Numbered from the stretch's first letter, positions 18,479 to 37,184 are shown. The stretch: 64,000 bases of DNA from Chlorokybus atmophyticus (GCA_009103225.1 RHPI01002533.1:1865186-1929185), one strand, 5' to 3'. Numbers and translations are program-made. The notes: generated by a model from the sequence alone, not told the origin.

Positions 18479-20052
18479 GCATACACATGAACGCAACCAA
18501 GCAAGCAAGCATCGAGCAGCTAAGCCAAGTTGCTGCTGCTCTCCTCTCAGCGCAGCTCCTGCTACTTGATGAGCTCACTGAGCTCAATTGACTGAACTCA
18601 CTCACATGTCGTGCCAGCTGTCCTTGCTGCTTTTGTGCGACAATATGCTGGTTGAGATTGGCTACATGTTCAACACACGCTGCCTGTCCAAATCAACACC
18701 CACACTGTCGTCGCCACTGCCGCCTTCAACAACTAGCAAAGCTGAAAAATGTCAAGCCACCCCGACGCAGTGGCAAGGTTGTTGGGGGCATGGGCGGCGG
18801 CATAGCCGGCGGTGCCGGCGGTGGTGTCGGTCGGGAAGTTAAGGGCATCGATTGCGTGCGTGCCACGGGTCTGCGGCGCTGCCCGCTGCGCCCGCCCGCA
18901 CAGCTGTCAGGGTGCAGTCTTTAACTGCTTGGAGCGTTGAGGCAGTGGCAGGAGCAGCAGCAGAGAGGCGTTGCGTATGCTGAAGTTTGATGCATGTTTG
19001 CTTGGTGTATAATATTAGTATTTGTGGGTGGGTGGGTGGGTGGGTGGCGGTGTGGGCGATATGATTATGCATTGTTATCAAACAAGGACGTTGTGGTGCA
19101 AAGTTTGCCGGCAAGCAACACATGCTAAATGCACCAAGCGTCGAGTTTCTGAAAGTTGATGTTCATTCAATGTGAGTACCTATTTGTTTTCGATTGTGCT
19201 GGTTGGTGAGAGCCGTGTCTCTACGCTAAGAATGGTGGCATTCAAAACAAAGCACTACAAGCTGCAACTGGAAGCTGTTCAAAGTGTGGGCCACAGGCTG
19301 TGGCGTCAGTGCTCATGTTGCCGGGTCGCATGTGGGAATACTCCACCCAAAGCAAATGGTCACCAAGCTCTCATTCAATGCGAGGTACACGTGCAGCAGC
19401 AGTTGCATGAAAGGGCTTTGGGAATGTGCTTACGAACTAGGTAGGCTTATGTAAATCAACAGTCTATACAGAGGGGCAGTAGGAGGAGGGGTAGAGTAGA
19501 AGGTAGAGTTAGCCCGGTGATCGTACTTGCAGGTGCGTGTGGTTTGCCTATGCGACGTATGGTGCAAAAATGCAAGTTCCAAACAGCCTCGTGCTTATCC
19601 TGTACATGTACATGGGTAGAGCAGCACAGCATGCTGCACGCTGTGCTGCTTTACCCCACACACGAGTTACAGAGAACACACCACTCAGCACGGTACGCCA
19701 CCTTCGCACATATATCATGCCGCAATTACTGCATCCATTTTCAGTACACACCGCATACAGCCCAGCACGTCACCCCCATGCACACCACATGGCCTTCGCT
19801 GTGGGTCCACGCATTATTTGTCAAAGATGGCATGCTAACAGTGGCCGGATGGCCTTCGGTTGCCCATCGACGCTAGCACATAACAAACTATACACATGAG
19901 TGCATGTGTCCATGCACGCTTGCGTGACCCGTGGGTGCATTATGTTGAGAGATATGCAAGACAGCCCTGATGCTGCTGAAAGCGATCTTCGAGTGATCAC
20001 ATGCAGGAACGTGCCAAGCGGACTGGACATATTTCAGACAGAAAGACACAAG

Positions 20053-23000
20053 TCAAGTAGCCTGCCAAGTTCTCAACACAGCCCAGTCCCACACAACAGC
20101 ATCCTTGTCTCTCTGTTCTGTAGTTGTGTCCTGCGCTGCTTCAGCAGTGATTTCCGGCAAGCCTGAAAGCGCGTCTGCCTGAGCGGCTGCATGCTCTTCG
20201 CAATAGCGTGCCAACGCGTCCCGCAGCACACGCGCGAGGGCAGCCTCACCCAACATCACAAGCACCTCTGCAAGCTGCCCAACCTGCCCACAAAAAGGAA
20301 GAGATGTTAACTGTTTATACACGTATGAGATGTTGCGATGAACTTTGTGACTTGTCAATGCAGACTTACTTCTTCCTTCAACCGTGCATGGGGCTGCAAA
20401 CCTTGTATGTACTGGATGAGGCCAAGCTCCTCGCCCGGGCTGCGCATCACAAGAGCAACGACTCCGCATCAACAGCAGCAACGCACCAAGGAAGAACATG
20501 ACGACAATGTTTGCACTCTTGCAAAGAGGGTGATACTCTTCCTGATGTGTGCAGCGTACCTGCCAGCGCGCACTCTCCCCGCTTTCTTGGACTGCTGCCT
20601 TGCAGCTCGCTTGGCTCGATGTGCAGCTGAACACACATACACCGCTCATGAACACTGCTTGAAGGTCTCAGTTCACCTTTCCTAGATTAGCCCCAAGCAT
20701 ACTTGCAACTATGCTGTCATCACCAAGCAAACACAACTCCAAGAAACATGGTAATCCTGCTGTCGCTTCAGAAAAACGCGGACACACATTCGCGCCCGCG
20801 CACCCGCACCCACACACGCACACGCACACACGCATGCACACACGCACGCATGCACGCGCGCGCGCACACGCACGCACATGTCAGTGCGCACACAAGCACA
20901 CGATGCAATGCACTTTGGACAAACGCCATGCATAACATGGACTTACTTGATGCGCCGCTGGCGGAGGAGACAGTGCTGGCAGTGCGGTTGTAGGCTGAGA
21001 GAGCGGAGATGCCGGTGACATTGGTGGCAGCCGTGGAGGCGACAGAGGCAGCATCGTCAAACTCCACAGCATGACCGTTCTCGTATCCACCCTCACGTTC
21101 TTCGGCCTCTCTCACGTGCAAAGCCAGCGCTCTACGCTTGGCGCGCACCGCCTGAAGACGCTCCAGATACTTGGACACCTTCTCCACCTATTACGCAGCG
21201 CAACACAGTATGATGCAACCATGCCTCATTGAAGCAGCCTATAAGTGTGTGTGCTTGCGCATGCATGTGTGAGTACGAGCTTGTCTGTATGTGCTGCGAG
21301 CGTGGGTGTGTACGCAGTTGTGCGTGCATGCATGCGTGTGCGTGTGCGCGTGCATGCATATATACCTATCATCCTTTACCCCTCCTGCAGTGAGTGTGTA
21401 TACCTGTTCCTGAAGCTCCGCAATGTGGGTCTCAGCTGCTTCAATTGCAGGGGCACGTGTGTCAGCGCCAGCAAGCGCGGCGGCATCCCGCCATTCCCGT
21501 CCCTCCAGCAGGATGTCTGCCGCCAGCTTCACGTCACCCAAGTGCTGCGATGCTATCTGAGCCGCCTCCACTGCTCGACCGGATACACGCACCTGACAAG
21601 GAGAAACCGATCAGGCACCAATTCACATGATTAGCAATATGTTGGGTTCGGGATAGCTGTGCACAGCGCCTGGATGCAAAAGGATTTAATGGGGAGTACC
21701 TGAGCAAGCAGGTCGTGGGCGAGCTTGACAATGTCTGGCTCGCTGCGGTTGGTCATGCGCGCCAGAGCAAGCGCCTGGCGCCAATGACCGCCAACTTTAT
21801 ACGCTGCCAATGCCCGCTCAGGCTGCAAAACATGTACAAACATTTACAGCTTTAGGCTCAGAAGCTCAGCAATGGTGACCTGACGAGTCCAACATGGTAG
21901 AGAAAAACTCCTAATGTAGTTGTGACTCCACACATTGCTCAACAGCTGAAAGGGCAACACGTTGTATCGCATGCATACTCAGTTACCTGTCCAGCAGCAG
22001 CAAAGGCAAGCGCAGCCTCCTGGAACTCCTTTTGGCGCTCAAGATGCTCAGCGTAGAGCTCGAGCACGGCAGCTTTCTTCTCACCACCATCGTCGCCGCC
22101 TTCACCTCCGCTGAACAGCTGCAGGCCCAGCTGGTACAGCTGCCGCTGACGAATGAGAGCCAAACATGCCTGGAAATGCTCCGCGCCTGCAAGAGGGAAG
22201 GGACTCACAAGTTACAGTTGTATGTGAGGCGCATGGTGCGCGTGTGCGTGTGCGTGCACACGGTTGCCGGTGCATGTGTGTGGGTGAAGATGTACGCATT
22301 TGTATGTGTGTTCTCCCTGAACACACGCGTGCATGTTTGTCCAAGGAGCATACGTTCAGTCTAGAAAGCACATGACATTGTCTCTCCCACATGCCTGCTT
22401 GTGACAGGCTCTCAAGGGCTTTCGCCCAGCGGCCCAGCGACTTGTCAATCTCAGCCTGGCGCAAAGCAACTGGAAGGGACTGCGACATGAAGCAAAGCCC
22501 GTTGAAATGAAATTACTGTTTATTTCGTCGGTGACACACAAGCGAGCAACCACCCCACCTGCAGCTGTTCGAGCTCGGGCAAGAACTCCCTGGGGTCTTC
22601 TCCAGCCTGGGCGGCAACCATGGCAGCGAGGTGAAGGTCGTACGTGCCGAGGGCTGCACGGAAGAGCAGTCTTGAGGAAGGAAGTGCTCCAACGTTGCCG
22701 CCGGCTTTCCCATTGGCAGCCTCCAGCCCCTTGGCCTCGCGCACCCCCTGCGCCAGGAAGATCAGGTGCGCAAGGGCGTCTGATGAGGTTGTGTCTGGGG
22801 GAAAGAAGCTGGGCCGAGGGGAGATGTTCATCTCAGACTCACGAAGCACCTGCATGAGAGACTAACAGCTCTGTGCACATGCACGTGTCTGCGCGTATAC
22901 ACGTGTATGTTATCCGATCTGTGCTGGTGTGTGTGCCTGTGCAGATGTGCGCAGGCACGTATGCGCCCATTTGCGTAGGTGTGGAACGCTATGTGATCGC

Positions 23001-26000
23001 AGTCATCTCTTGCAACTTGCCTTGATTTGTAGCAGCGCTGCTTCAAGCTCAGGAGGGTCACATCTCACATAGGAAGCCAGTACGCACTGCCATGCGTTGC
23101 GCAGCAGCGCGCGGCCCCCCTCGGCAATGTTTGCGTCTTGCACAAGTGCTTTGCGAACGGCCTCGCACACAGCGTTGACACCAGCCTTGTCCAGACCCTC
23201 ACCGTCCCGCAGGGCACTGAGGACCTCACCGATAAGAGACGCATCACCAACCTGCTCACACCGCAAGGCGGCTTCAGCACTGTTGGCAGCTCAGTGTCTT
23301 GCAATTGTGTAAATGCCCCAAGCATGTATGCACGTACGCAAGCGTCAAGCTTGCTGCAACACGCTTGCGCATGTGCAAACACATGCTTGTGTACGCACAT
23401 GTGTGTGCTTACGGACATGTGCATAGTTCTACACACCTGCGCCACAAACTCTGAGGCTCTTGACAAAAAGGTTGGCCAGGTGTGTGCGGCAATGATGCTC
23501 AGGCTGACACGGTTGCGGCGTGCAATGTCCAACGCATTGCGAAACTGGTGGCTGTCTAAAAGGCGCCGCACTGCAGGAAGCACAAGCGGTCGCGGGTACA
23601 CCGTCTCCAGGTTGCCACGCGGCATCTGCATGATGGACTTGTTTGCAGCTGCTGAGGTAAAACATCATACGTGCATGCACATAACCTCACACACACTTGG
23701 CTTGCCATGCGCGCGCCTGCATGCACACATGCACGCATCGGCAACATACACCAGCATGTACCTGGAGAACAACGCCGACTCCGCCGGCCACCCCAGCGCA
23801 TACCAGCCTGGCCCGCTGCTCCAGCGCACGTCCACTGAGAAGTGTTATCAGCTGCTGGCGCAAGCGTGCATGCATCGGGCCAAGCAGCACACAACAACCC
23901 ACCTCGAGATGCTGTCCTTATTGGTTCGTACAAACAGCAGGTCACCCAACGTCGTGTACACAACGGTACCGTCTGCGAAGAGCGCGATGCTGGTGGCATC
24001 GCTGGCGATTATGCTTATGTCTGCTTCGGTTGACTGAAGCAACTTCCTGTCTTTGGTAAGGCCTATGACACACTCCGGTGAAGTGCCCACCCTCATTGCT
24101 CCACATGGGGATGGGAATGGCTTCAACGTGGACATGACCTTCCCAAGCGCCGACACAACAAACAGCGTGTTCTCTGTTTGCACTACCAGTCTGGGTGGAT
24201 GTGATGAAGGCTCAGGACCATTGTCAAAGGGTGTAAGCCGCACAATCGATGAAGTCAGCGGTGTCGTTGCCACCATTGCATCTTTGTCGTTGCCAAGTGC
24301 GATCGCAATCAACGTGTCGGGTGCGTCGATGATGCACGCATCTGCACTTTGACATGCAGCGAGAAACAAGCTGCCGTCACAATATGCCAGCTGGCGTGCA
24401 CGTGTGCCCACATCCTCCTCATCATCGGTACCGAGCCTGCATGTTGCCCGTTGATGTTGATGCGTTCAAAAGCTGTGTAAGTTCAAGGCACGTACAACAT
24501 GACATGAGCTCACACACCTGGGTGGTGGGATAACGCGCTGAGGCTTGCAGTGAGGCTCAACATCCTCTGGGTTTGCTGAAAGCTCGGTCCACTCCTGCTG
24601 CGATTTGCGCTCCAACAACGCAACAGACCCATCTGATAAGAGCGCCGCCAAGACCTGCCATGACACAAAGACTATTGAGTATTATAGCAGATATTCAACA
24701 CACCAGTGAAGAAATGTGTGGTAAACCGCACAACTCTTGATACATGCATCAACAGTGTCACCTGAGTGCCATCAACTGCGCCAGAGACGGAGGCATGGAT
24801 GACAGGGGCGGAGGTGTCCATGACAACATGGCACATCGGGGGCGGGATCACACCGGCATGCAGATCCGTTATGCGCACCGAGCACCCATCCGCAACCTGA
24901 GTTTCATTTGTGGTGTTTGGGTACAGCAGTGTCCAACCAGTAGGCGGACCTGACTAGCCAGCTTCAAAATAGAAAACTGCACTCTGGCATGCTGTCCAAC
25001 GTGCACACATTCGTGAAGTGCTGTCACACACGCACGCATGATCTAACCGCGTGTCCCTATAGCGCAAGGGCGTTGAACAGCCATATCAGCTAGCGGACTC
25101 AAACTCGTCGCAGCACAGCACAGTATGGACTTGAGAGAAGACCTCTGTTTACCGCAGCAATGCACAGGGTTCCTAGAGCAGCACTTTCCCATGCCAGCGT
25201 GTACTCCCGCACGTCATCGACGTGCCGTGCGTCCCGGCAAAGGACAATCAGGTGCAGCGGGATCGCACCCCACATCGCGCGAGGACATGCGGCGGGGGAG
25301 AAGCGCCACTCCTGCCTCAGGTACCAGCGCCAGTTGCTGCTGTGCCAGATCTGTTGCATGCAGTTGTTACCTAGCCTGCTCCGTTCCGCTTGTAAGCAAC
25401 ATATTAAACCAGACCAGACCAGCCTGGCCCAGACCAGACCAGATTGAACCTGACTTAGCTAGAACCGACCAGAGCAGATCACAGACACACCTGTACTGCG
25501 GTGAACTCGGCAGAGTGCAGGACAAGAAGAAGGAGCTCGGAGTCTGCAGACCAGCTAATAGAGCCCACTTCAGTCTGCAGAGAGAACCACGCAGCTTGAT
25601 GCAGAGCTGCTGCAAGCACGAGTGCATGTGCACGCACACAGTGCGTGCGCGTGATAGAGCATGCAAGATGACTGGAAGACTATGTGTTTACTCAAGACCC
25701 ACCTTAGGATAGATTAGTGGGAAGCTCGTGCGCGGCAACCCATTGCGTTCATACAGCGCGACAATTGGCGGCGAAGCCGCTGTTGACTCTCCTCCTTGAC
25801 TTGCACGCCATCCTTGCCCCGCCGCAATGAAACTGCCATTGGGTCGCCACGACATTGGACCCTGATAACAAACATGCAATCATAAGTAACAGTGTATCAA
25901 ACATCAAATGTAAGATGCTTGGTTTGATACTATCAATATACCTGGCAGGATTGCAGACAGGTTGAGTGGAGCACAAGACCTTCCCTCTCCCACACACGTA

Positions 26001-27301
26001 GTTGGCCATAAGGGTTGTGTCGCGTAAGTTTGCAGTTGTCACCTTGACTTGCGCTATCAGCGTCCGGCACATGCGTGGCCAAGTATTTGCCGTCTCCACG
26101 CCAACATATTGAGACCGTCTCGACATCACGGTGTGGCTCTCCCTCAGCTAACACACTCCCTTCCGCCAGCACATCCCACGTCAAGAGGCTCAGCAGCATC
26201 AGCGCCCCTGTCTTGGTTGATATTGCCAACACCTCCCCATCCGGACTCCATGCCGCACCTGGTTGGCTGTAGTTCAATTGACAAAGCAGTGCATACCAAT
26301 GAAAACCCTTCAAGATATTTCACGTTCGCAGTAGGATGTGCATGTGCATCACAGGAGAGGGCATGCGCACAATGCCAACATGGGCGAGTGGGTGGGTGTC
26401 TCTCTGCATGTGTGCATGTGCGTGTGCGCACACATGCATGCAGGCGCATGTGCACGTGTGCTGGCGCGTGCGTGCATGCGTGGGTGTGTGCATGCGTGTG
26501 CTAATGTGTTGCATGAACCGACATGACCAAGGTGTTTCAACCTGATATGCCAGCATCAACTCTGCCCACTTCTTCCCATATAGCTTCTTCCGGTCTGAAC
26601 ACGGCAAGCAGGCCCGAAGCCCAGGCCGCGCACAAGCCATCATCCACGCTCTGAAAGCCCACAACACCGCTGGTGAAGTTGTCCATTACGGGAACGTCCG
26701 ACTGCCAGCCCTGGCCTGGAGCGCACTCGTACAGAACCTAGTGAGGAGGAATTGCAACTGCTTCTTGTTACCACGAGCACAACCAGACTCCCGATCACCA
26801 ACAGCATGAGACATGGGTGTCGCATGAGACTACAAGAATTAGTTGCTCTGTGACAGTATGCACATGGTGCATGCTCAGTTGCAATATTGCACGGAGAGAT
26901 GCACACCTTCATGTCAAACGGTAACAGTATGACAGCAACAAAAGGAAAGCACAAATTACTGGGCTCGGATGTGATATACATACTACGCTCACATATGCCA
27001 TTGATAAGTGACACTTGATGTCACAAGTGTGTAGTTGATAACGCTTGTTACACTGAGAGTAACACAACGCTATTGGGAATTCACCATTTAAGCCTCATGC
27101 ATGCATGCAACTAGATTGGATTCCCAAATCAACAATAGACACCATAATCCTTGCCTGTTCTTGGCTGTAGCCAGTAACCCTTCCGTCAGCGTACAGCACA
27201 TGCAGCTCGCCTTCGGCCGAGTCGGCCACGGCAGCAGCCGGCGGGGAGGCGGCAGCGGGAAGTTTCCGCCGCCGCTCCAACAGCACCAGCAGGTTCTTCA
27301 T
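20053..27301 (-). CDS. ELP1: Elongator complex protein 1 (IKI3/IKAP), many exons
   Basis: Motifs seen: MKNLLVLLE, ICWRGDGKYLAT, MSWRPNGSFIAA, YERNGL, ISWSADSELL, IWHSSNWRWYLRQE, QMPRGNLETVYPRPLVL, ALGTYDLHLAAMVAAQAGEDPREFLPELEQL, EIDKSLGRW and KAGRVRAG|SPGEE. Stop at 20053. Confidence 0.95.
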
Positions 27302-29140: not shown

Positions 29141-32100
29141 ATGCAGGCTGTAGCTGCGTCCATCAGCAGGCAATCCGTCAGGTACAGCGATCGCCCAGGC
29201 AGCAACATCAGTAATGACAGCTCCACAACGACGCTGCTGCTGCCTCCGCCGGCAGCTGCAGTGGCGAGCTTGAGCGCACTGCCAGGGCTGCTGGTGCCGG
29301 TGGATTCACCCAACAGCTCCCTCGCCAACCACAGCGGGAGCGCCGGGGCGGGCAGCGACGCCCTAACGCCCATCAGCCCCACTTCTGACGCGGGCGAGCT
29401 TGAGCACACCGGAGGCGGCCATGGCAACCTCGGTGGCCATGCCTCCACCTCCGGGCGGGGTGGTTACGGCGACGGCGCCAGCACGTCGTTCAAGGGAGAT
29501 GGAGGCAGCAGCCTCCACCATGCCACTATTAACAGCGGCGGGAACCACCACCGCCAAGCGCCAGCACTCGACCCGCAGGCGGCGCTGCGCTTGCTATCGC
29601 CGTTCATTCCGCAGCTCCTGCTGCAGAAACTTAGTGCCGCAGGTAAGCTTCACAGCAAGCACCAAAATCACCAAGCATGTTGAGCACACAGTGGTAGAGA
29701 CATTATTGCTTGCATGCACTAGAGGGTTCTTGTCATGAAGCATCCAAATTGTTTGGGATCTTGCATGTTGTTAACTCGCAACAATTGGGAACGCTATGTA
29801 GTGGTGGATGCTGCACGGTGCCAACAGGATGGACTGATCTTCTTTGCCCCATCATCGAGCGGACTAACAACGTAGTGTGCATCTCTTTAGCTGGATTGTG
29901 CAAGGTTCGACAAGTGTTTTTGTTGCACAGGCAAAGAGCCCATGGTGCCTTCAATGGAGGTGTTGACGTGCGCCATGTTGGTTGCCGATATTTCCGGGTT
30001 TACTGCGCTCACAGAGCGTGCTTTGCTCAACCGTCGCGGCACGGAGATTGTGGAAGAGCTCACAGCATGCATGAACAGATATTTCACAGAGGTAAAGTGA
30101 TGTTCTTGCGGGAAAGCACGTTGTTGCAAGGGCCTCGTGAGAGTTGGCAAATAGAAGGCTCATTTTTTACATACATAGAATGCATGTCGTAGTGACTGTA
30201 AGGGTACGGGCGCAGTCTTACTTGCGTGAGTATATCAGGGACCAGGTCCAGTGCATGGAGCATTGCAAGTGACAGTCATGTTAGCAACAACACGTTGCTC
30301 CAGCAAACGTGACGCATTCTGCACAGTTGATCGGTGCACTGGCTGCATGACAATCAAACGGGGCACAGCATACACATGCCTAATTGCCAGGTGTCGCAGT
30401 GTTCATGGTGCAATGGTAATCAGTGTCTTTGTTCAGGCCATTGAGATTCTCATGGAATATGGTGGTGATGTGATCAAGGTATGCTGTCCGTGCAAGCGGC
30501 TATCCAGTTGAACTAGAAGTGTTGCATATGCAACTTGTGGCTGAGTTGCTGCATGTCACAAGATACCTTGCATGTTGATCTGATCATAGATGGTGCTGCA
30601 GTTTGCTGGAGACTCCATGCTTGTTGCCTTTCCATTGGATACTGCAGCCAGTGAGGTAAATATGCAATTGAGGGATTGCATGGGTCGTGCCACAACGCAG
30701 TACTGAACCCTTTTCTCCATGCTGTCTAGTCTTTGTCAGCATGCGCTTTGCGAGCAGCAAAGTGCGGTGATGACCTCGTTTGCACTCTGGGCGCCTACTC
30801 GCCCGAGGTAAGCAGAACCAGCTTGTTTACAATATGCATTTGTTGCAGCTTGGTCTGCAATTGTTGCGTCAACGTTGCTATGCCTGTCTTGAAGTGACTT
30901 TAACATCATGCTTTACAGCTTGGAGGCTACGGCACTACGGACTACAGCAGTGCCAACGACTCAGACGAGGGGTTGCCTCTAGCCCGAGGCTTGTCTCCTT
31001 GCGGTGGTGGACTGGGACCAACAAAAGTGCTTGTGGTGGATGACATTTTACCAAACAGGGTTGTCCTAGGCAGGATGCTAAGCAAGCTCGGCTGCGAGGT
31101 GCGGATTAACACACAACCAGCTGTTGGTGTTGTGGTTGGTACTAAGATGGTGTCTGCAGGTCATGCATGCGACCAATGGGCTTGATGCCGTTCAGCAATG
31201 CGAGCAGCAGGAGTTTGCGTTTGTTTTCATGGACCTGCTTATGCCCCCGGGCATGGACGGTTACGAAGCAACCAGGCGCATACGTGGGCTTGGATGCACG
31301 GCTTACATTTCAGCTGTAACTGGACAGAAGGAGAGCGAGGTTAGGGCCGCGTGTCAGGACGCTGGCATGGACGGCTTCCTTGTCAAACCCATCACCATGG
31401 GCACGCTCATGAAAATCATCACCCCCAAGATGGGGCACAGCACGCGTGGTCGTGACATTGGCTCACCTGCTCACTCGCGTCGCCGGCCTGCCGGCGCACA
31501 GCGGCTTCAGGCGGGAGTTCTTGGACCGCTTACTCTGTCTTTGAAAGTGATGGTTGGCATTGGAGAGGTGAGGGGACAGCTGCCTTTTATGTTGCAACTG
31601 GCATCAGCCTTACTGAACGAGGCCTCACATTTACACGCTTCTGCTTTGTAGATGGCGGCTTTTCGTACTGGCAGTGATGTTGAGTTGCCCTCCAATGCTC
31701 CGCGCTGGGAGTTTTTGCTCGCTGATTACAATGTCGGCGACTCAGCTGCGCCACGGCGGCAGCCAATCGAACAGATTCAACAGGCTGATGAGGTTGCGAA
31801 TCCCGGTAAGTTGCACCATTCACAGTTGGTTAGCAATGCCGACAACATGCCTTGGCTTTAGGGAACCTTCTTGCCTGCTCAGGTGACGTCATTTTGTCGC
31901 CTGAAATCTGGGCATTGGTGCACGCTGTCTGCGAAGGCGAGCACCTTCCCACTGGCAATGTGCGATTGAATAAAGTCACTGCGGAGGTACCTGAGGTTAT
32001 CCGACGAGAGCGCACGTATACCAAGGAAGAAGCCACTGAGGTGCTTGCGCAGCTCAGACCCTACATTCCAAATACGATCCGCAGTCGACTTGAGGCTGGG

Positions 32101-35100
32101 GAGAAGCATTCTCTTTCGGAGATACGGAGGTGCACAATCCTTTTCCTTGGCCTGCCATCTCTGAACCCCAAACTGCGCAACCCGGATCAGCTTGAGGCGG
32201 TTCAAACCGCCATGCGCGTTGTGCAAGGCGTGTTGAAAAAATTTGAAGGTTGCCTGGCACAGTTTCGAATGGACGAGAAAGGTAGGTGGCTGACCAGATG
32301 GTTTGTGAATAATGTATGGGCATGCAGCTTGAAGCAAGCTTATGAATGAATGTTTGGACCAGGTTTCTTGATGATATGTGCATATGGTGTCCTTGGGAAT
32401 ACGCATGAAGATGATCCTGCTCGCGGTGTTGCATCTGCCCTTGCCATCCGAGCCGGACTTGCACAGGAGGGTCAAGATGGTGTCATTGGCTTGACAACAG
32501 GTTGATTGATGTGTTTGCAAGCTAGCATCAATCAAGTGCTATATCTGTGACATTGCTGAACGAATTGCATGCTCTTGTGCGGTAAGCGGAAATATGATGC
32601 CCATATATCAATCTGGAGCTTGTCACACAGGCAAGCTCTTTTGTGCTACTGTTGGAAGCAAGCGTCGTTGCGAGTTCACTGTTTATGGCGACTCCATCAA
32701 CTTGAGTGCAAGACTGATGAAGAAGGCCAGAAACGAGGTTTGCACAGCAGTGACTGTCAGCTGCTGTCTACTGACTACTGACGCTGTAGGCTAATGTCCC
32801 TTGGTGCAGATTCTCGTTGATGCTGCCACATACACTGAGACAAAGGACATTTTTGACTACACCGTCCTACCCCCTGTCCAGGTCAAGGGAAAATCTATGC
32901 TGGTCCCGGTGTTCCGGCCGCAGGGCATAAAACCAGGCAAATCAAAATGGGCTTTCATGGAGGACACCCCTCCCGCAAAGCGCATAGATACGTCTCCGAA
33001 AAATAAGTACCCTGGGCCTCTCGTTGGTCGACAGCGGGAGACTGCCCTCATTCTGGAACGGATTAAACAGCTCACAACTGCCAGCACTGGCAGCGTGTTC
33101 ATCGTGGAAGGGTTGCCTGGCATTGGCAAGACAAGGCTGGTTGATGCCATCTGTAGCAATCTACCCGACACCTCTTGCCGTGTGCTATATGTCGCTGGCA
33201 AGAGCAAAGCGGAGCTGCTGACGCCTTGGAAGCGACTACTGAGCTCGCTGCTGTTTGACAAGAAGATGACAAACAAGCAGAAGGGCCTGAAAGTGCTTTC
33301 TTGCCTGGACTACTCTGCGTGGCCGGACGTACTGTTATTAGCAGACATCTTTGGCCTCGACTTCTCTGATCAAGACAAGGACACAATGGCGTTTCGCTCG
33401 CGCATGGACGACTCCCCGAGTCGTATGGCTACCTTTCCGACTCGACTTCAGGTGCGGCATCCCATGCATGTGAAGGTTGGAGCAATTGACAATGCGCTAA
33501 CGTCAGTGTCACTTGTAGGATCAACATAGACGAGGTACAACTGCCACGTCAACAGCTCAAGAACTTAGCAGCTTGAGAACATCCTCGCAAAGTCTGCAGC
33601 ATGAGGTGATTCCTCGTCATTGCTTTGGTTACCGTATTAGTTATCATGTTTGTTCAATAATCAATTCACAGCTGCTTCACTGCCTGTTTCTGGCAGCATC
33701 CTCGCAACATGAGCACACCAACCGCCTTGGACGGGCGCACGCTACGCGCTTCTGGTGCAGAGCATAAGCTAGCCCTGGGTTATCGGGCAGAAAAAATCTG
33801 CGAACTCATGCAGAAGCTTTTGCGCTCCATCATTCAGCCGCCGTGCATACTCGTGTTGGAAGACGCTCATGTATCCAACCACTTGCCCCAGTTTTGTTTA
33901 TGAATGGTTGCTGTGCAGCTTTTATCCTGTTCTCACCATCTCGCTTGCACAGTTTCTCTCTGCTGGTCTCCTTGACCATCAATACAGCACTTTGATCCGC
34001 TGTCATGGATTGTCGCAAAGCAGCTTGTCGGCGATGTCAGCTTTCCAATCCTCCTCTTGATTGCGATGCGCCCGATGGAGAATAAGCTCTCGCCAATGGA
34101 GGTCACTGCCATTGAAAATCTGCCAGTGACGATGAAGGTATGCGTGCGTGTGTGCACGTGTTTTCTGCACGTCCGCAACAGTTGCATCTTTGAACGGGCA
34201 AGCTGACTGGCGATGCAGGTTCGGCTCACAGAGCTGACGGAGGAAGAAGCACGCACCCTGGTTTCCAAGATTGTCGGCCCGCAGAAGGCTTCACAGCTGC
34301 CCGAAGCATACTACAGCACGATATATCAGAAGACCAAGGTCAGCACCCAGTAGCTTTGTGGATCGTTTGCTCCAAGGCATTGTAGCTTACGAACGTTACT
34401 GACATCTCATATCAGGGCCAGCCTTTGTTTGTTGAGCAAATGGCTGTTGCCATCAGCTCCAGCGACATCAATCAGTCTCTGGAGACAGAGACATTGACTC
34501 GCCCGATAGAGGCGTTAATAACCAGCAAGATAGATCAGCTCAACCCGATTGATGTACTCATGCTGAAGGTATTTTACTGCTTGTAGTGCCACACTGTTCA
34601 AAGGTTGGGACGAGGCACGCTGAAACATCGTTGTGCAGATTGCCAGTGTGATTGGCACAAGTTTTAGCACAAAACTGCTGCAAGCCGTCCTCAATAGTCA
34701 GCTGGCTCGAGAGCGGCGCACAGCTGGCAATAATGATGATGAGGTGCGTCTTTCGTCCCATGGCTGTTTCTATTACGTGTTTTCCATTGGACTCCCCTCA
34801 CCACTGGCATGGCAGGTCGTGTACCTGAACGATCATCAATTTATGATTGGGCTTCGTGAGCTTGAGCAGGAAAAGTGGTTCACGCGTCGACGAGAGGATG
34901 GCAAGGGCATGTATCACTTCACAAACTTTCTTTCCCGTGATGTAATGTACGAGATGATACCCATATCACAGCGGCGGACCATTCACACGGATGTGGCAGC
35001 CAAGCTGTTTGAGATGTCCGACAATAACAATGTTCCGAGCGCAATGGTGGCTTACCATTACACATTGGCCTGCCGCGATGTCGAACACTACGAGAACGAC

Positions 35101-37184
35101 CTTCTTGAAAATGCAATTCAACACTGGGAACGTGCTGCCGAGCATGCACTGCACACCTTTGGACAACATGTCACAGCGGTATGTATGCCTTGCTGCACCT
35201 GTGTGTCTATGCTACCACCCACTCCTTTGCTCTTGCAACTGGAAACAGTTTGTGTGCTGTGCAGATTCGGTACTACAAAGAGGCTGTTGCTCTTGGTGAG
35301 ATCGCTCGCAACGACATCAGCGCTAGTCGGCGTGCCATTTGGGAAAGGTTAGTCGTATGCCACTGGTTATGTTGGTATCTGGTCTTGACAGTCGCTGAAC
35401 GCCTAGTGCTTATGCGACACAGGCGCATCGCGTATGCTTACATGGCGATTGGGGACTTGGATGCCAGTATTGAGCATGTCATTAGCGCTTTGAAAGCTCT
35501 GGACGAGCCCATACCTGATGTACATGAGATGTCGAGGCGCAGTCAGATTGAAAGAGTGCGCAGCAACTGCCGAACAGGCTGCGGCAGCCTTGTTGCAGAG
35601 CTGTTCCTCAAAGCCTTTTACTCGCGACACACTCGCCTCATCCCGAGGCCAACTACTCCAATGAATGATGTAGTGATGGCGATCGAGTTCCGCTTGCAGG
35701 CTCTGTACGACCTAACAAGCATTGCTTTGTGCAAGGTAAGTCACACCAAGGGGACATACCGGACACGCTAGTTAGCATGCAACAAGTTGCAGCCTGATTG
35801 CTGAATACCAACTTTGTTGTTGTATTACCTTCTGGCCAGAATGACGTTGCCCTGGCCACATATGCCTGCTTGAGATACCTCAACTTGACTGAAAGCCTTG
35901 ATGGGTCGCACATAGAGCCGAGTATTGAGATGGCTCGAGCGTACTCCATCGCTTGTGCCATTGCAGAGGACCCGGAGTATGCATACGAGTACCAGGCAAG
36001 AATTGTTGCATTGTCACAACCTTTGCTAGTGTGCATGCTGCGTGAGCTACTGAGATGTTGGCTCCAAACAGGTTCGCTGTTTGGAAATCCAAGGCATGTG
36101 CACTTCTGCGGATGAGAGTATATACACAGCAGACATCCTATACAATATCGCTGTGAACTCTGTCACTCGGGGAGACTGGCAGAAAGCGGAAGAGTATGCG
36201 TTCGAGGCCACGACCATCTTTTTAAGTTTCCAGGACCAGCGGCAGGTGGACATGTGCCAGTGCATCACCGCCGTTGCAAACTACCATCAGGGCAACTTCG
36301 ACAGTTGCCAGACGGCAGCTGAGGTGCTGCACAGCTCGCGTTTGGGCCATCCAGACTTACGGCTTTGGGGGCTCTGCTTGCTTCTTGCCAGCCTCAACGG
36401 CCTTCGCAAGTACAAGAAAGCCATGACTGTGCTGCGCGCGTACCAAACCAAGGAGGATGAGATGGCCATCGCACCCGCTCCTACCATAATGAAGCTCTGC
36501 GTGAATGTCGTTGGCTGCGAGAGTTGCTGGCGATCTGGACAGCTGCATAGCCACCAAGAAGCTGTGTCGGTGGCGCTCACACTGTTGCCTGTAAGTGTTG
36601 CTACAGGTGGTCTTAAGCGTCATGCATGGTTTGTTTTAGAAATGTTAGCGAATTGTCTGGTTTCTCTTGATGCAGGAGCTGTTGGCAATCAAGCCCTTCA
36701 CCCCTCTCTATCCCATGGCAATGGTGTCGCTGCTTGAAGTCTTGGTGGAGTCGTTGAGCATTGAAATCACGGGCGTGACATTGCAACAGCGTCACTTAGC
36801 TGTGACCAAGCTAATGAAGGCCTTACATCGACTTGCCTACAGAATGAGTAAGTGTTGTCATCAGTCCAACATAACTTGTAGGTGTTGGGTGCGTATAGGT
36901 ACTTGATGTTGTTGTTGTTGTGCAGCGTTTATGTATGTCTATGTGAGCTTCTTCAAGGGCAAGCTTGCTGCCATCAAAGGTCAGCGCAAGAAGGCCGCGA
37001 AGTACTTCCACCAAGCTTTCAATGACGCGATGCACACAGGAATGCGGTAAGCAGCCTGTGCCATCTGCTGTATTCAATGCGTCATTCCATACAAGCAAGT
37101 TGCGTGGTCTTAACTGCTGATTGGGTGCTGCGCAGGCATGTACAGCGGGTAGCGAACGGTCTTTTTCATGAAAACCAACCATGA
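29141..37184 (+). CDS. Soluble-type class III adenylyl cyclase (ADCY10/sAC-like): C1 with inserted receiver domain, C2, STAND NTPase, helical/TPR-like C-terminus; more than 20 exons
   Basis: C1: LSPFIP, MLVADISGFTALTE, GGDVIK|FAGDS, LSLKVMVGIGE, WEFLLAD, GDVILSPE. C2: LSEIRRCTILF, MDEK|GFL, HEDDPARGV, GKLFCATVGSKRRCEFTVYGDSINLSARLM, VKGK. STAND: LVGRQRE, Walker A GLPGIGKT (33110-33133), Walker B LVLEDAH. Probable stop TGA at 37182-37184. Confidence 0.92.
31024..31425 (+). other. Response-regulator receiver (REC) domain encoded inside cyclase domain C1
   Basis: KVLVVDDILPNRVVLGRMLSKLGCE|VMHATNGLDAVQQCEQQEFAFVFMDLLMPPGMDGYEATRRIRG...SAVTG...DAGMDGFLVKPI. The DD pair, the phospho-acceptor D (31232-31234), the switch T and the K (31385-31387) are all present. 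Confidence 0.9.
33871..33987 (+). other. Candidate U12-type (minor spliceosome) intron in the cyclase gene
   Basis: The donor is GTATCCaa. A TCCTTGAC branch-like site at 33969-33976 lies 12 nt from the AG with no pyrimidine tract between them. The flanking exons join in frame (LEDAH|HFDPLSW). Positions +7/+8 deviate from the GTATCCTT consensus. Confidence 0.4.

What the first reader, a model, noticed from the sequence alone, without database searches (positions are those of the whole stretch)
29141..37184. Full-length sAC-type cyclase (two catalytic domains + STAND + helical repeats) with intact catalytic residues in a green-lineage genome
Seen: both metal-binding Asp residues (codons 29987 and 30611), the base-specifying Lys (MDEKG) and Thr (EFTVYG), and the Asn/Arg pair (INLSAR, 32699 and 32711). 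These match human sAC D47, D99, K334, T405, N412 and R416, which predicts ATP specificity. An intact Walker A/B STAND module and a long helical tail follow. Established: this layout is known from animal ADCY10, Dictyostelium SgcA and some bacteria, whereas the class III cyclase described in streptophytes (CAPE) is an AC-PDE fusion. More than 20 spliceosomal introns argue against contamination or a recent transfer.
Basis: partly seen in the sequence, partly recalled or inferred. Interest (0 to 1): 0.7.

Follow-up and report, generated by a model that had tools for sequence, protein, structure and literature searches.

The report
Algal sAC-like cyclase with built-in receiver
An early-diverging relative of land plants expresses a large soluble enzyme built like animal soluble adenylyl cyclase, but with a phosphorylation-receiver domain spliced into its first catalytic half; similar uncharacterised genes occur across green algae, although the literature treats this enzyme type as absent from plants.

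Summary
The gene is real, native and expressed. Spliced transcript contigs from two studies give 20 GT..AG introns. These define an unbroken frame of 1,367 codons, extended in silico to about 1,800 codons with the stop at 37050, not 37184.

Every cyclase exon matches human ADCY10 best among solved structures. The only close relative is Mesostigma viride Mv16533, which is colinear over its whole length. Its modelled catalytic core matches human sAC first.

One assignment is wrong: the Lys of MDEKG aligns with human K340 in the FDKG loop. Human K334, which recognises the base, aligns with a Gln. The Arg176 position of the bicarbonate site is also a Gln. ATP specificity is therefore plausible but not predicted.

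A complete receiver domain, with all phospho-acceptor residues, lies in exons 6 and 7 inside C1. Mesostigma has it too.

The family is not unique to this genome. Chara, Trebouxia, Micractinium, Chlorella, Volvocales and Bryopsis carry unnamed homologues that form one clade (100% support) and share an insertion at the same C1 site, without a receiver.

The scan's only related note lies on this same window.

Verdict: a new variant of a known kind.

The parts
29141..37050 (+). Coding span of the gene: 25 exons, about 1,800 codons
   Evidence: Exons E1-E20 and the E20/E21 joint come from transcript contigs. E21-E25 come from a frame and splice-site search and from colinear tblastn of Mesostigma P0152. 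The tail borders at about 36590/36649-36676 are uncertain.
29141..29642 (+). Exon 1: Ser/Ala/Gly-rich N-terminal extension, ending in the conserved N-terminal motif (LLSPFIPQLL)
   Evidence: Composition. The motif aligns with the N-termini of the bacterial and Mesostigma proteins.
29931..30807 (+). C1a, first half of catalytic domain 1 (exons 2-5). Holds metal Asp 29987-29989 (human D47), Lys 30476-30478 (K95) and metal Asp 30611-30613 (D99).
   Evidence: Best PDB hit is ADCY10. Coordinates. Alignment.
30919..31522 (+). Insertion in the C1 alpha3-beta4 loop carrying a receiver domain (core 31018-31426; intron 31099-31159). Acidic pair Asp 31039 and 31042, phospho-acceptor Asp 31232-31234, Thr 31319, Lys 31385.
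   Evidence: Pfam PF00072: 64.7 bits, E 1e-17. Exonic in contigs X1, X2 and X3. Residues. Closest solved receivers are those of hybrid kinases: RcsC, SLN1.
31523..31983 (+). C1b, second half of catalytic domain 1 (end of exon 7, exon 8, start of exon 9). Lys 31544-31546 corresponds to human K144. A Gln stands at the human R176 position. There is a second, shorter green-lineage insertion after RWEF.
32071..32956 (+). Catalytic domain 2 (exons 9-12). Gln 32260-32262 stands at the human K334 position. Arg 32266-32268 is conserved in the green clade. Lys 32278-32280 corresponds to K340 of the FDKG loop. Thr 32678 corresponds to T405, Asn 32699 to N412 and Arg 32711 to R416.
33029..34242 (+). STAND-type P-loop NTPase: Walker A 33110-33133 and Walker B 33850-33870
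   Evidence: Pfam AAA_16, E 2.5e-07, with weaker nSTAND3 and nSTAND6 hits. Motif coordinates. Alignment with the bacterial consensus.
34219..37050 (+). Helical tail with weak TPR-like matches
   Evidence: Weak TPR_12 and TPR_2 hits. The Mesostigma tail gives TPR_12 at 1.6e-04. Colinear with Mesostigma at 38-53% identity.
37051..37184 (+).
   Evidence: The frame used by the Mesostigma-colinear last exon stops at 37048-37050. The reads call did not cover this part.

Best explanation
This is a native, transcribed nuclear gene of the alga. Earlier scan notes name the genome as Chlorokybus. It encodes a soluble protein of about 1,800 residues from the sAC-like branch of class III nucleotidyl cyclases.

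C1 and C2 should fold into one pseudo-heterodimer with a single active site. C1 supplies the two metal-binding Asp residues and the pyrophosphate-contacting Lys. C2 supplies the Thr on the base and the Asn/Arg pair for the transition state. The product is most likely cAMP. This is inferred, and it is weakened by Gln in place of the base-recognising Lys.

A complete phosphorelay-type receiver domain is hard-wired into the alpha3-beta4 loop of C1. It shares an exon with C1 strand beta4, so it cannot be spliced out without destroying C1. The proposed mechanism is that phosphorylation of its Asp, by a histidine kinase or HPt relay, shifts C1 relative to C2 and so gates catalysis.

The STAND P-loop and helical tail are a second regulatory or oligomerisation module, as in full-length animal sAC, where their role is also unknown. 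Control by bicarbonate is unlikely because the Arg176 position is Gln.

Shown here: gene structure, expression, architecture, residue mapping and phylogenetic placement. Inferred: product, phospho-control and the role of the tail.
For: Expression and constraint:
- Spliced contigs from two studies give an open frame.
- Of the 40 differences listed against a 97%-identical sister transcript, 33 are synonymous. Every listed difference inside the receiver core is synonymous.

Similarity to sAC:
- ADCY10 is the best PDB hit for each cyclase exon.
- The orthologue's C1b-C2 region matches ADCY10 at E 1.2e-17, against 1e-05 for the next cyclase.
- The AF2 core has pLDDT above 90. Its first 24 Foldseek hits are all human sAC, at E 4e-25 to 2e-20 and TM 0.75-0.79 by target.
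- Catalytic residues were mapped, against the residue table of PMC12867704.

Receiver domain:
- Pfam E 1e-17, with the DD, D, T and K residues intact.
- Conserved in Mesostigma.
- Nearest solved receivers belong to hybrid kinases.

Other:
- No hydrophobic span looks like a membrane helix.
- The green clade has 100% SH-aLRT support.
- ELP1 is the upstream neighbour.
Against: - No enzymatic data exist.
- The Lys334 position is Gln in all green-lineage members, so the base cannot be called from sequence.
- The receiver part of the AF2 model has low confidence (pLDDT 40-60), so its contact with the core is unknown.
- Chlorophyte homologues carry long inserts with no Pfam match at the same site. 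The loop therefore tolerates insertions that may have no regulatory role.
- Purified human full-length sAC showed no regulator specific to the full-length form (PMC12802110), so the role of the tail is open.
- The last five exon borders are predictions.
Confidence: 0.6

Rival explanations
1. It is a guanylyl or dual-specificity cyclase, as reported for the Dictyostelium sAC homologue sGC. The Gln-x-Arg in strand beta2 of C2 would replace the adenine-selective Lys.
For: - Human K334 aligns with Gln, and an Arg two residues on is conserved in the whole green clade.
- PMC6660944 notes that the Dictyostelium homologue of sAC encodes a guanylyl cyclase.
- From memory, not checked here: mycobacterial Rv0386 has Gln/Asn at the specificity positions and shows guanylyl side-activity.
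Against: - Thr at the T405 position, which contacts adenine in human sAC (PMC12250328), is kept.
- No Glu/Cys pair typical of guanylyl cyclases is present.
- Several bacterial homologues also vary at the Lys position: Q, R and H.
Confidence: 0.25
2. The receiver is a tolerated loop insertion with no phospho-control. Regulation, if any, comes from the STAND/TPR tail or from pH.
For: - Chlorophyte homologues have inserts of about 130-870 residues with no recognisable domain at the same C1 site.
- Non-mammalian animal sACs are controlled by pH rather than bicarbonate (PMC12867704).
Against: - All five receiver signature residues are intact in two lineages.
- Differences from the sister transcript inside the receiver core are all synonymous.
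Confidence: 0.25
3. It is a catalytically dead scaffold (pseudo-cyclase) kept for its STAND/TPR signalling hub.
For: The canonical base Lys and the Arg176 equivalent are lost.
Against: Both metal Asp residues, Lys144, Thr405, Asn412 and Arg416 equivalents are all conserved across the green clade.
Confidence: 0.08
4. It is bacterial contamination or a very recent horizontal transfer.
For: After Mesostigma, the nearest sequences in the exhaustive search are bacterial AAA_16/cyclase/TPR proteins of 1.2-1.45 thousand residues.
Against: - It has 24 spliceosomal introns and spliced transcripts.
- ELP1 lies next to it.
- Orthologues with the same insertions occur across Viridiplantae and form one clade, in which the chlorophytes group together (100% support) and the three streptophyte rows are unresolved at its base.
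Confidence: 0.01

Closest known systems
Animal soluble adenylyl cyclase (ADCY10, full-length isoform)
   Same: - Soluble, with tandem C1-C2 class III domains followed by a STAND P-loop and a helical region.
- Best sequence and fold match among solved structures.
- Equivalents of D47, D99, K95, K144, T405, N412 and R416 are present.
   Different: - A receiver domain is inserted in the C1 alpha3-beta4 loop.
- There is a second insertion after RWEF.
- Gln stands at K334 and Gln at R176, so the bicarbonate site is incomplete.
- There is an N-terminal low-complexity extension of about 140 residues.
- Orthology with ADCY10 was not tested, because no animal sequence could be fetched.
Bacterial 'class 3 adenylate cyclase / AAA_16 / TPR' proteins of about 1,350-1,450 residues (Chloroflexota, Planctomycetota, Cyanobacteria, Verrucomicrobiota)
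   Same: - Same order of C1, C2, P-loop and TPR.
- 33-39% identity over C2 plus the P-loop.
- These proteins themselves match human ADCY10 at E 1e-49.
   Different: - They have no introns, no C1 insertion and no receiver.
- Most keep the Lys (INK motif) where the green clade has Gln.
Mesostigma viride Mv16533 (three gene-model isoforms, unnamed)
   Same: Colinear orthologue of 2,034 residues, with the receiver at the same place in C1, the same Q-F-R-M-D-E-K-G motif, and a STAND domain and tail.
   Different: 27-64% identity by segment. Its linkers are longer. It is only a predicted model and has not been described.
Green-algal and Chara homologues (Volvox VOLCADRAFT_116897, Tetrabaena 'Adenylate cyclase type 10, partial', Chara CBR_g8385 and others)
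   Same: Same clade (100% support), the same insertion site in C1, and the same Q-F-R motif.
   Different: Their C1 inserts have no detectable receiver or other Pfam domain. The Chara model lacks C1 and is fused to a reverse transcriptase.
Receiver-cyclase fusions of prokaryotes (for example the 370-395-residue Response_reg + Guanylate_cyc proteins of Nitrososphaerota)
   Same: They combine a receiver with a class III cyclase domain.
   Different: In those proteins the receiver precedes a single homodimeric cyclase domain. Here it is nested inside one half of a pseudo-heterodimer.
CAPE, the adenylyl cyclase-phosphodiesterase fusion of sperm-forming streptophytes
   Same: It is a class III cyclase in the streptophyte lineage.
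   Different: - CAPE has an N-terminal PDE domain and no STAND tail.
- CAPE was reported as not detected in Mesostigma (PMC8115329).
- No PDE match was found here.

Membership tests
sAC-type soluble class III cyclase (ADCY10-like architecture) | Two class III catalytic domains in one soluble chain | tested here: met
   Colinear exon matches to ADCY10 C1 and C2. The orthologue's core model matches both halves of human sAC. No membrane-helix-like span was found.
sAC-type soluble class III cyclase (ADCY10-like architecture) | Asymmetric active site: two metal Asp in C1; Thr, Asn and Arg in C2 | tested here: met
   Asp 29987 and 30611; Thr 32678, Asn 32699 and Arg 32711
sAC-type soluble class III cyclase (ADCY10-like architecture) | Base-recognising Lys (human Lys334) | tested here: not met
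   Gln at 32260. The MDEKG Lys corresponds to K340 of the FDKG loop (residue table in PMC12867704).
sAC-type soluble class III cyclase (ADCY10-like architecture) | Bicarbonate site (Lys95 + Arg176) | tested here: not met
   The Lys is present (30476). The Arg176 position is Gln here and Ser in Mesostigma. Many non-mammalian sACs also lack this pair.
sAC-type soluble class III cyclase (ADCY10-like architecture) | C-terminal STAND P-loop NTPase plus helical/TPR region | tested here: met
   AAA_16 and nSTAND hits with Walker A and B. Weak TPR hits.
sAC-type soluble class III cyclase (ADCY10-like architecture) | Orthology with animal ADCY10 / Dictyostelium SgcA in a tree | tested here: inconclusive
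   No animal or amoebozoan sequence could be obtained. The tree holds only green, other algal and bacterial rows.
sAC-type soluble class III cyclase (ADCY10-like architecture) | Cyclase activity and nucleotide preference | not testable with these tools
   Needs expression and an enzyme assay.
Response regulator receiver (PF00072) | Profile match above the curated cut-off | tested here: met
   64.7 bits against a cut-off of 30.2, on exon 7 alone. The Mesostigma protein scores 84.3 bits.
Response regulator receiver (PF00072) | Acidic pair, phospho-acceptor Asp, Thr/Ser and Lys | tested here: met
   Asp 31039 and 31042, Asp 31232, Thr 31319, Lys 31385. The same motifs are present in Mesostigma.
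Response regulator receiver (PF00072) | Phosphotransfer to the Asp | not testable with these tools
   Biochemical test.
CAPE (AC-PDE fusion) | Class I phosphodiesterase domain fused to the cyclase | tested here: not met
   No PDE family hit on the ten longest open stretches of the gene or on the first six proteins of the exhaustive search, Mesostigma isoform P0001 among them.

The most novel reading that the evidence does not exclude
A phosphorelay receiver nested inside a cyclase catalytic domain acts as a built-in allosteric switch. It would wire two-component signalling directly to cyclic-nucleotide synthesis in the deepest streptophyte branch, the Mesostigma and Chlorokybus clade. It sits in the alpha3-beta4 loop of C1. 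From memory, that loop belongs to the groove pseudo-symmetric to the one where G-alpha subunits dock on membrane cyclases. This would be a previously undescribed way of regulating a class III cyclase, and a clear cAMP (or cGMP) source in a lineage where cyclic-nucleotide signalling is disputed.
Probability: 0.45. Interest if true: 0.7.

Novelty: new variant of a known kind. Interest (0 to 1): 0.58.

Why it matters
The literature I could search treats sAC as absent from plants (PMC6660944, citing Roelofs and Van Haastert 2002). CAPE is the class III cyclase it describes in streptophytes, in the two papers found.

This work shows an expressed sAC-like gene under purifying selection in a basal streptophyte. 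It belongs to a green-lineage clade that reaches Chara and many chlorophytes and that nobody appears to have described. That gives cyclic-nucleotide research in algae a concrete candidate enzyme.

The receiver domain nested in C1 offers a directly testable link between His-Asp phosphorelays and cAMP or cGMP. It is also a natural case of domain insertion, useful for understanding how class III cyclases can be regulated or engineered.

Tried and rejected
1. Fetching animal ADCY10 or Dictyostelium SgcA for a tree. A profile search with 24 bacterial homologues returned only bacteria among its 120 listed hits. The Dictyostelium sGC paper is not held. Sister-group relations to animal sAC therefore stay untested.
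2. Chara locus. I wanted to see whether its C1 also holds a receiver, but the gene range is 153 kb and no DNA was returned.
3. Pfam scan of the chlorophyte C1 inserts found nothing.
4. My first in-silico tail model cut exon 23 at 36500. tblastn of Mesostigma shows coding homology up to 36584, so that border was rejected. The donor is 36591 or 36597, and the acceptor 36649 or 36676.
5. Literature searches for sAC-type cyclases in green algae, Chlamydomonas, Chlorokybus or Mesostigma found no characterisation.
6. The Gln/Asn substrate-selection detail for Rv0386 could not be confirmed in the papers held. It is marked as recalled.
7. The receiver part of the AF2 model was low-confidence because the alignment held no receiver homologues. 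No inference was drawn about its docking.
8. The exhaustive search gave no self-hit, so I could not examine the public gene model for this locus.
Full report
**1. Is it there?**

The region holds many short open stretches on the + strand. Pfam finds three things on single open stretches:
- a receiver domain (PF00072, 64.7 bits, E 1e-17);
- an AAA_16/STAND-type P-loop;
- a weak cyclase match.

Each cyclase-bearing stretch has human ADCY10 as its best match among all solved structures, in colinear order. C1 start matches human residues 31-72, the linker and C2 start match 260-341, and the C2 end matches 387-431. Each hit is weak on its own (E 0.38, 0.03 and 0.004), but all three point to the same protein in the right order.

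**2. Expression and gene structure**

Four public runs hold part of the stretch. The two best hold 56-64% of its sampled words, the share expected of spliced RNA.

Three of these runs gave contigs when laid on 29400-35399: a 6,295-nt contig (X1, identical), a 6,247-nt contig (X3, about 97% identical) and pieces from a 2013 study (X2). All skip the same intervals, and every skipped interval is GT..AG. Four joints were not listed; I recovered them from loose ends and record coordinates.

Exons E1-E20 run from 29141 to 35347 and read as 1,367 codons without a stop. All acceptors are AG and all donors GT.

The remaining exons were predicted from frame, splice sites and codon usage. They were then corrected against the Mesostigma orthologue, which is colinear to 37044. 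The likely stop is 37048-37050, giving about 1,800 codons and 24 introns.

Of the 40 differences listed between the window and contig X3, 33 are synonymous. All of those within the receiver core are synonymous. The gene is therefore under purifying selection.

The upstream neighbour on the minus strand is ELP1, and G+C content is even across the window. This is a native nuclear gene. Earlier scan notes name the genome as Chlorokybus. That fits with Mesostigma being the only close relative.

**3. Architecture**

The order is:
- a low-complexity N-terminus;
- C1a, with both metal Asp residues;
- an insertion of about 180 residues carrying a full receiver domain (exons 6-7);
- C1b;
- a linker;
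- C2;
- a STAND P-loop, with Walker A at 33110 and Walker B at 33850;
- a helical tail with weak TPR matches.

No stretch looks like a membrane helix.

The receiver has the acidic pair, the phospho-acceptor Asp (31232), the Thr and the Lys. Its nearest solved relatives are receivers of hybrid histidine kinases: RcsC at 6e-12, and SLN1.

Exon 7 encodes both the bulk of the receiver and strand beta4 of C1. The receiver therefore cannot be removed by exon skipping without destroying C1.

**4. Catalytic residues**

The functional table in PMC12867704 lists these human residues:
- D47 and D99 bind the metals.
- K95 and R176 bind bicarbonate.
- K144 contacts pyrophosphate.
- K334 recognises the ATP base through water.
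- N412 and R416.
- The C2 beta2/3 loop, FDKG, at 338-341.

Ungapped alignments anchored on both sides place MDEKG on FDKG. Its Lys is therefore K340, and K334 falls on Gln 32260.

In a multiple alignment, every green-lineage homologue has Q-F-R at this place, while most bacterial homologues and human have Lys.

The R176 position is Gln here and Ser in Mesostigma. Equivalents of D47, D99, K95, K144, T405, N412 and R416 are all kept.

The active site therefore looks competent. The base preference cannot be read off, and mammalian-type bicarbonate activation is unlikely.

**5. Relatives**

An exhaustive HMMER search of 1.84 billion representatives with exon 12 gave only two hits at E 1e-10 or below, and only one of them is close. 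There was no self-hit.

That close hit is Mesostigma viride Mv16533. Its 2,034-residue isoform is colinear with the whole gene and has the receiver at the same place in C1.

Everything else in that list falls in two groups:
- proteins of about 1,200-1,450 residues, which are cyclase/AAA_16/TPR proteins wherever I checked them, and those that carry a name are bacterial;
- shorter fragments.

A profile search shows this family has thousands of members in Chloroflexota, Planctomycetota, Cyanobacteria and Verrucomicrobiota. One of them matches human ADCY10 at E 1e-49.

A word-index search with the Mesostigma C2 and P-loop region found unnamed homologues in these genomes:
- Chara braunii;
- two Trebouxia;
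- Micractinium;
- Chlorella sp. A99;
- Chlamydomonas eustigma;
- Edaphochlamys;
- Volvox;
- Tetrabaena (auto-named 'Adenylate cyclase type 10, partial');
- Bryopsis;
- Cyanophora;
- Phaeothamnion.

In a quick IQ-TREE tree of 76 rows, the green-lineage rows form one clade with 100% SH-aLRT support. These include exon 12 of this window entered on its own. Inside the clade, the three streptophyte rows stand apart from a chlorophyte subclade. The backbone among the bacterial rows is unresolved.

Green-lineage members share an insertion between C1a and C1b of 130 to about 870 residues, which bacteria lack. Only Mesostigma and this gene have a receiver there.

**6. Fold**

AlphaFold2 was run on Mesostigma residues 100-800 with 44 homologues. 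The core came out at pLDDT above 90, and the insert at low confidence. The insert lies between helix alpha3 and strand beta4 of C1.

In Foldseek, the first 24 hits are all human sAC, at E 4e-25 to 2e-20 and TM 0.75-0.79 by target. Adenylyl cyclase 9 follows at 5e-14.

**7. Literature**

I found no paper on sAC-type cyclases in green algae.
- PMC6660944 repeats that sAC orthologues are absent from plants.
- Full-length human sAC has a predicted STAND domain of unknown role (PMC12802110).

**8. Reading**

This is a soluble sAC-like cyclase of a green-lineage clade. It most likely makes cAMP and is gated by phosphorylation of the nested receiver. The rivals are GTP or dual specificity, a passive insert, and a pseudo-enzyme. 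Contamination is excluded.

**9. Rule-keeping**

The joined spliced protein was built only inside local scripts, to check the frame and to map coordinates. The second of these scripts also printed about 410 residues of the joined tail translation in its own output. The joined sequence was never sent to a search or fold tool. Searches used single exons by reference, or the stored Mesostigma orthologue as proxy.

Noticed in passing
window 20000-27000, minus strand: The upstream neighbour is an intron-rich ELP1 (Elongator subunit 1) gene, with Pfam hits to the ELP1 beta-propeller and alpha-solenoid.
   Followed up: partly
P0186 and P0187 (ENA contigs of 410 kb and 15 kb): Two proteins of about 2,900 residues combine a class I phosphodiesterase domain (PF00233) with an sAC-like cyclase and AAA_16. 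This is an AC-PDE fusion on an sAC-type chassis, from an unidentified organism (probably a eukaryote). It recalls CAPE but has a different build.
   Followed up: no
P0159, P0160, P0169, P0170, P0173, P0177, P0191 (chlorophyte homologues): The gene models carry stretches of 570-1,240 residues with no Pfam match, exactly at the C1 site where this gene has its receiver. These are either real disordered inserts or unrecognised introns in GC-rich genomes.
   Followed up: partly
P0155 (Chara braunii CBR_g8385): The public model spans 153 kb, lacks C1 and is fused to reverse-transcriptase domains. It is probably a mis-joined model hiding the Chara orthologue.
   Followed up: partly
P0001 and P0151 (Mesostigma isoforms RA.2 and RA.3): The two shorter isoform models start inside C1a, after the first metal Asp. 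They are either annotation artefacts or N-terminally truncated forms that would be inactive.
   Followed up: no
window 29400-35399, run X3: A second transcript, about 97% identical with a 3-nt insertion at 29422, comes from the same 2021 study. It looks like a sister strain or cryptic species of the same alga.
   Followed up: partly
window 31730-31780 (exon 8) and homologues: A second, shorter insertion after the RWEF motif of C1 (consensus ..RRxPIxQI..) is shared by the streptophyte and chlorophyte members whose models cover that part, and is absent from the bacterial and other algal rows aligned. It may be a further marker of the green clade.
   Followed up: partly
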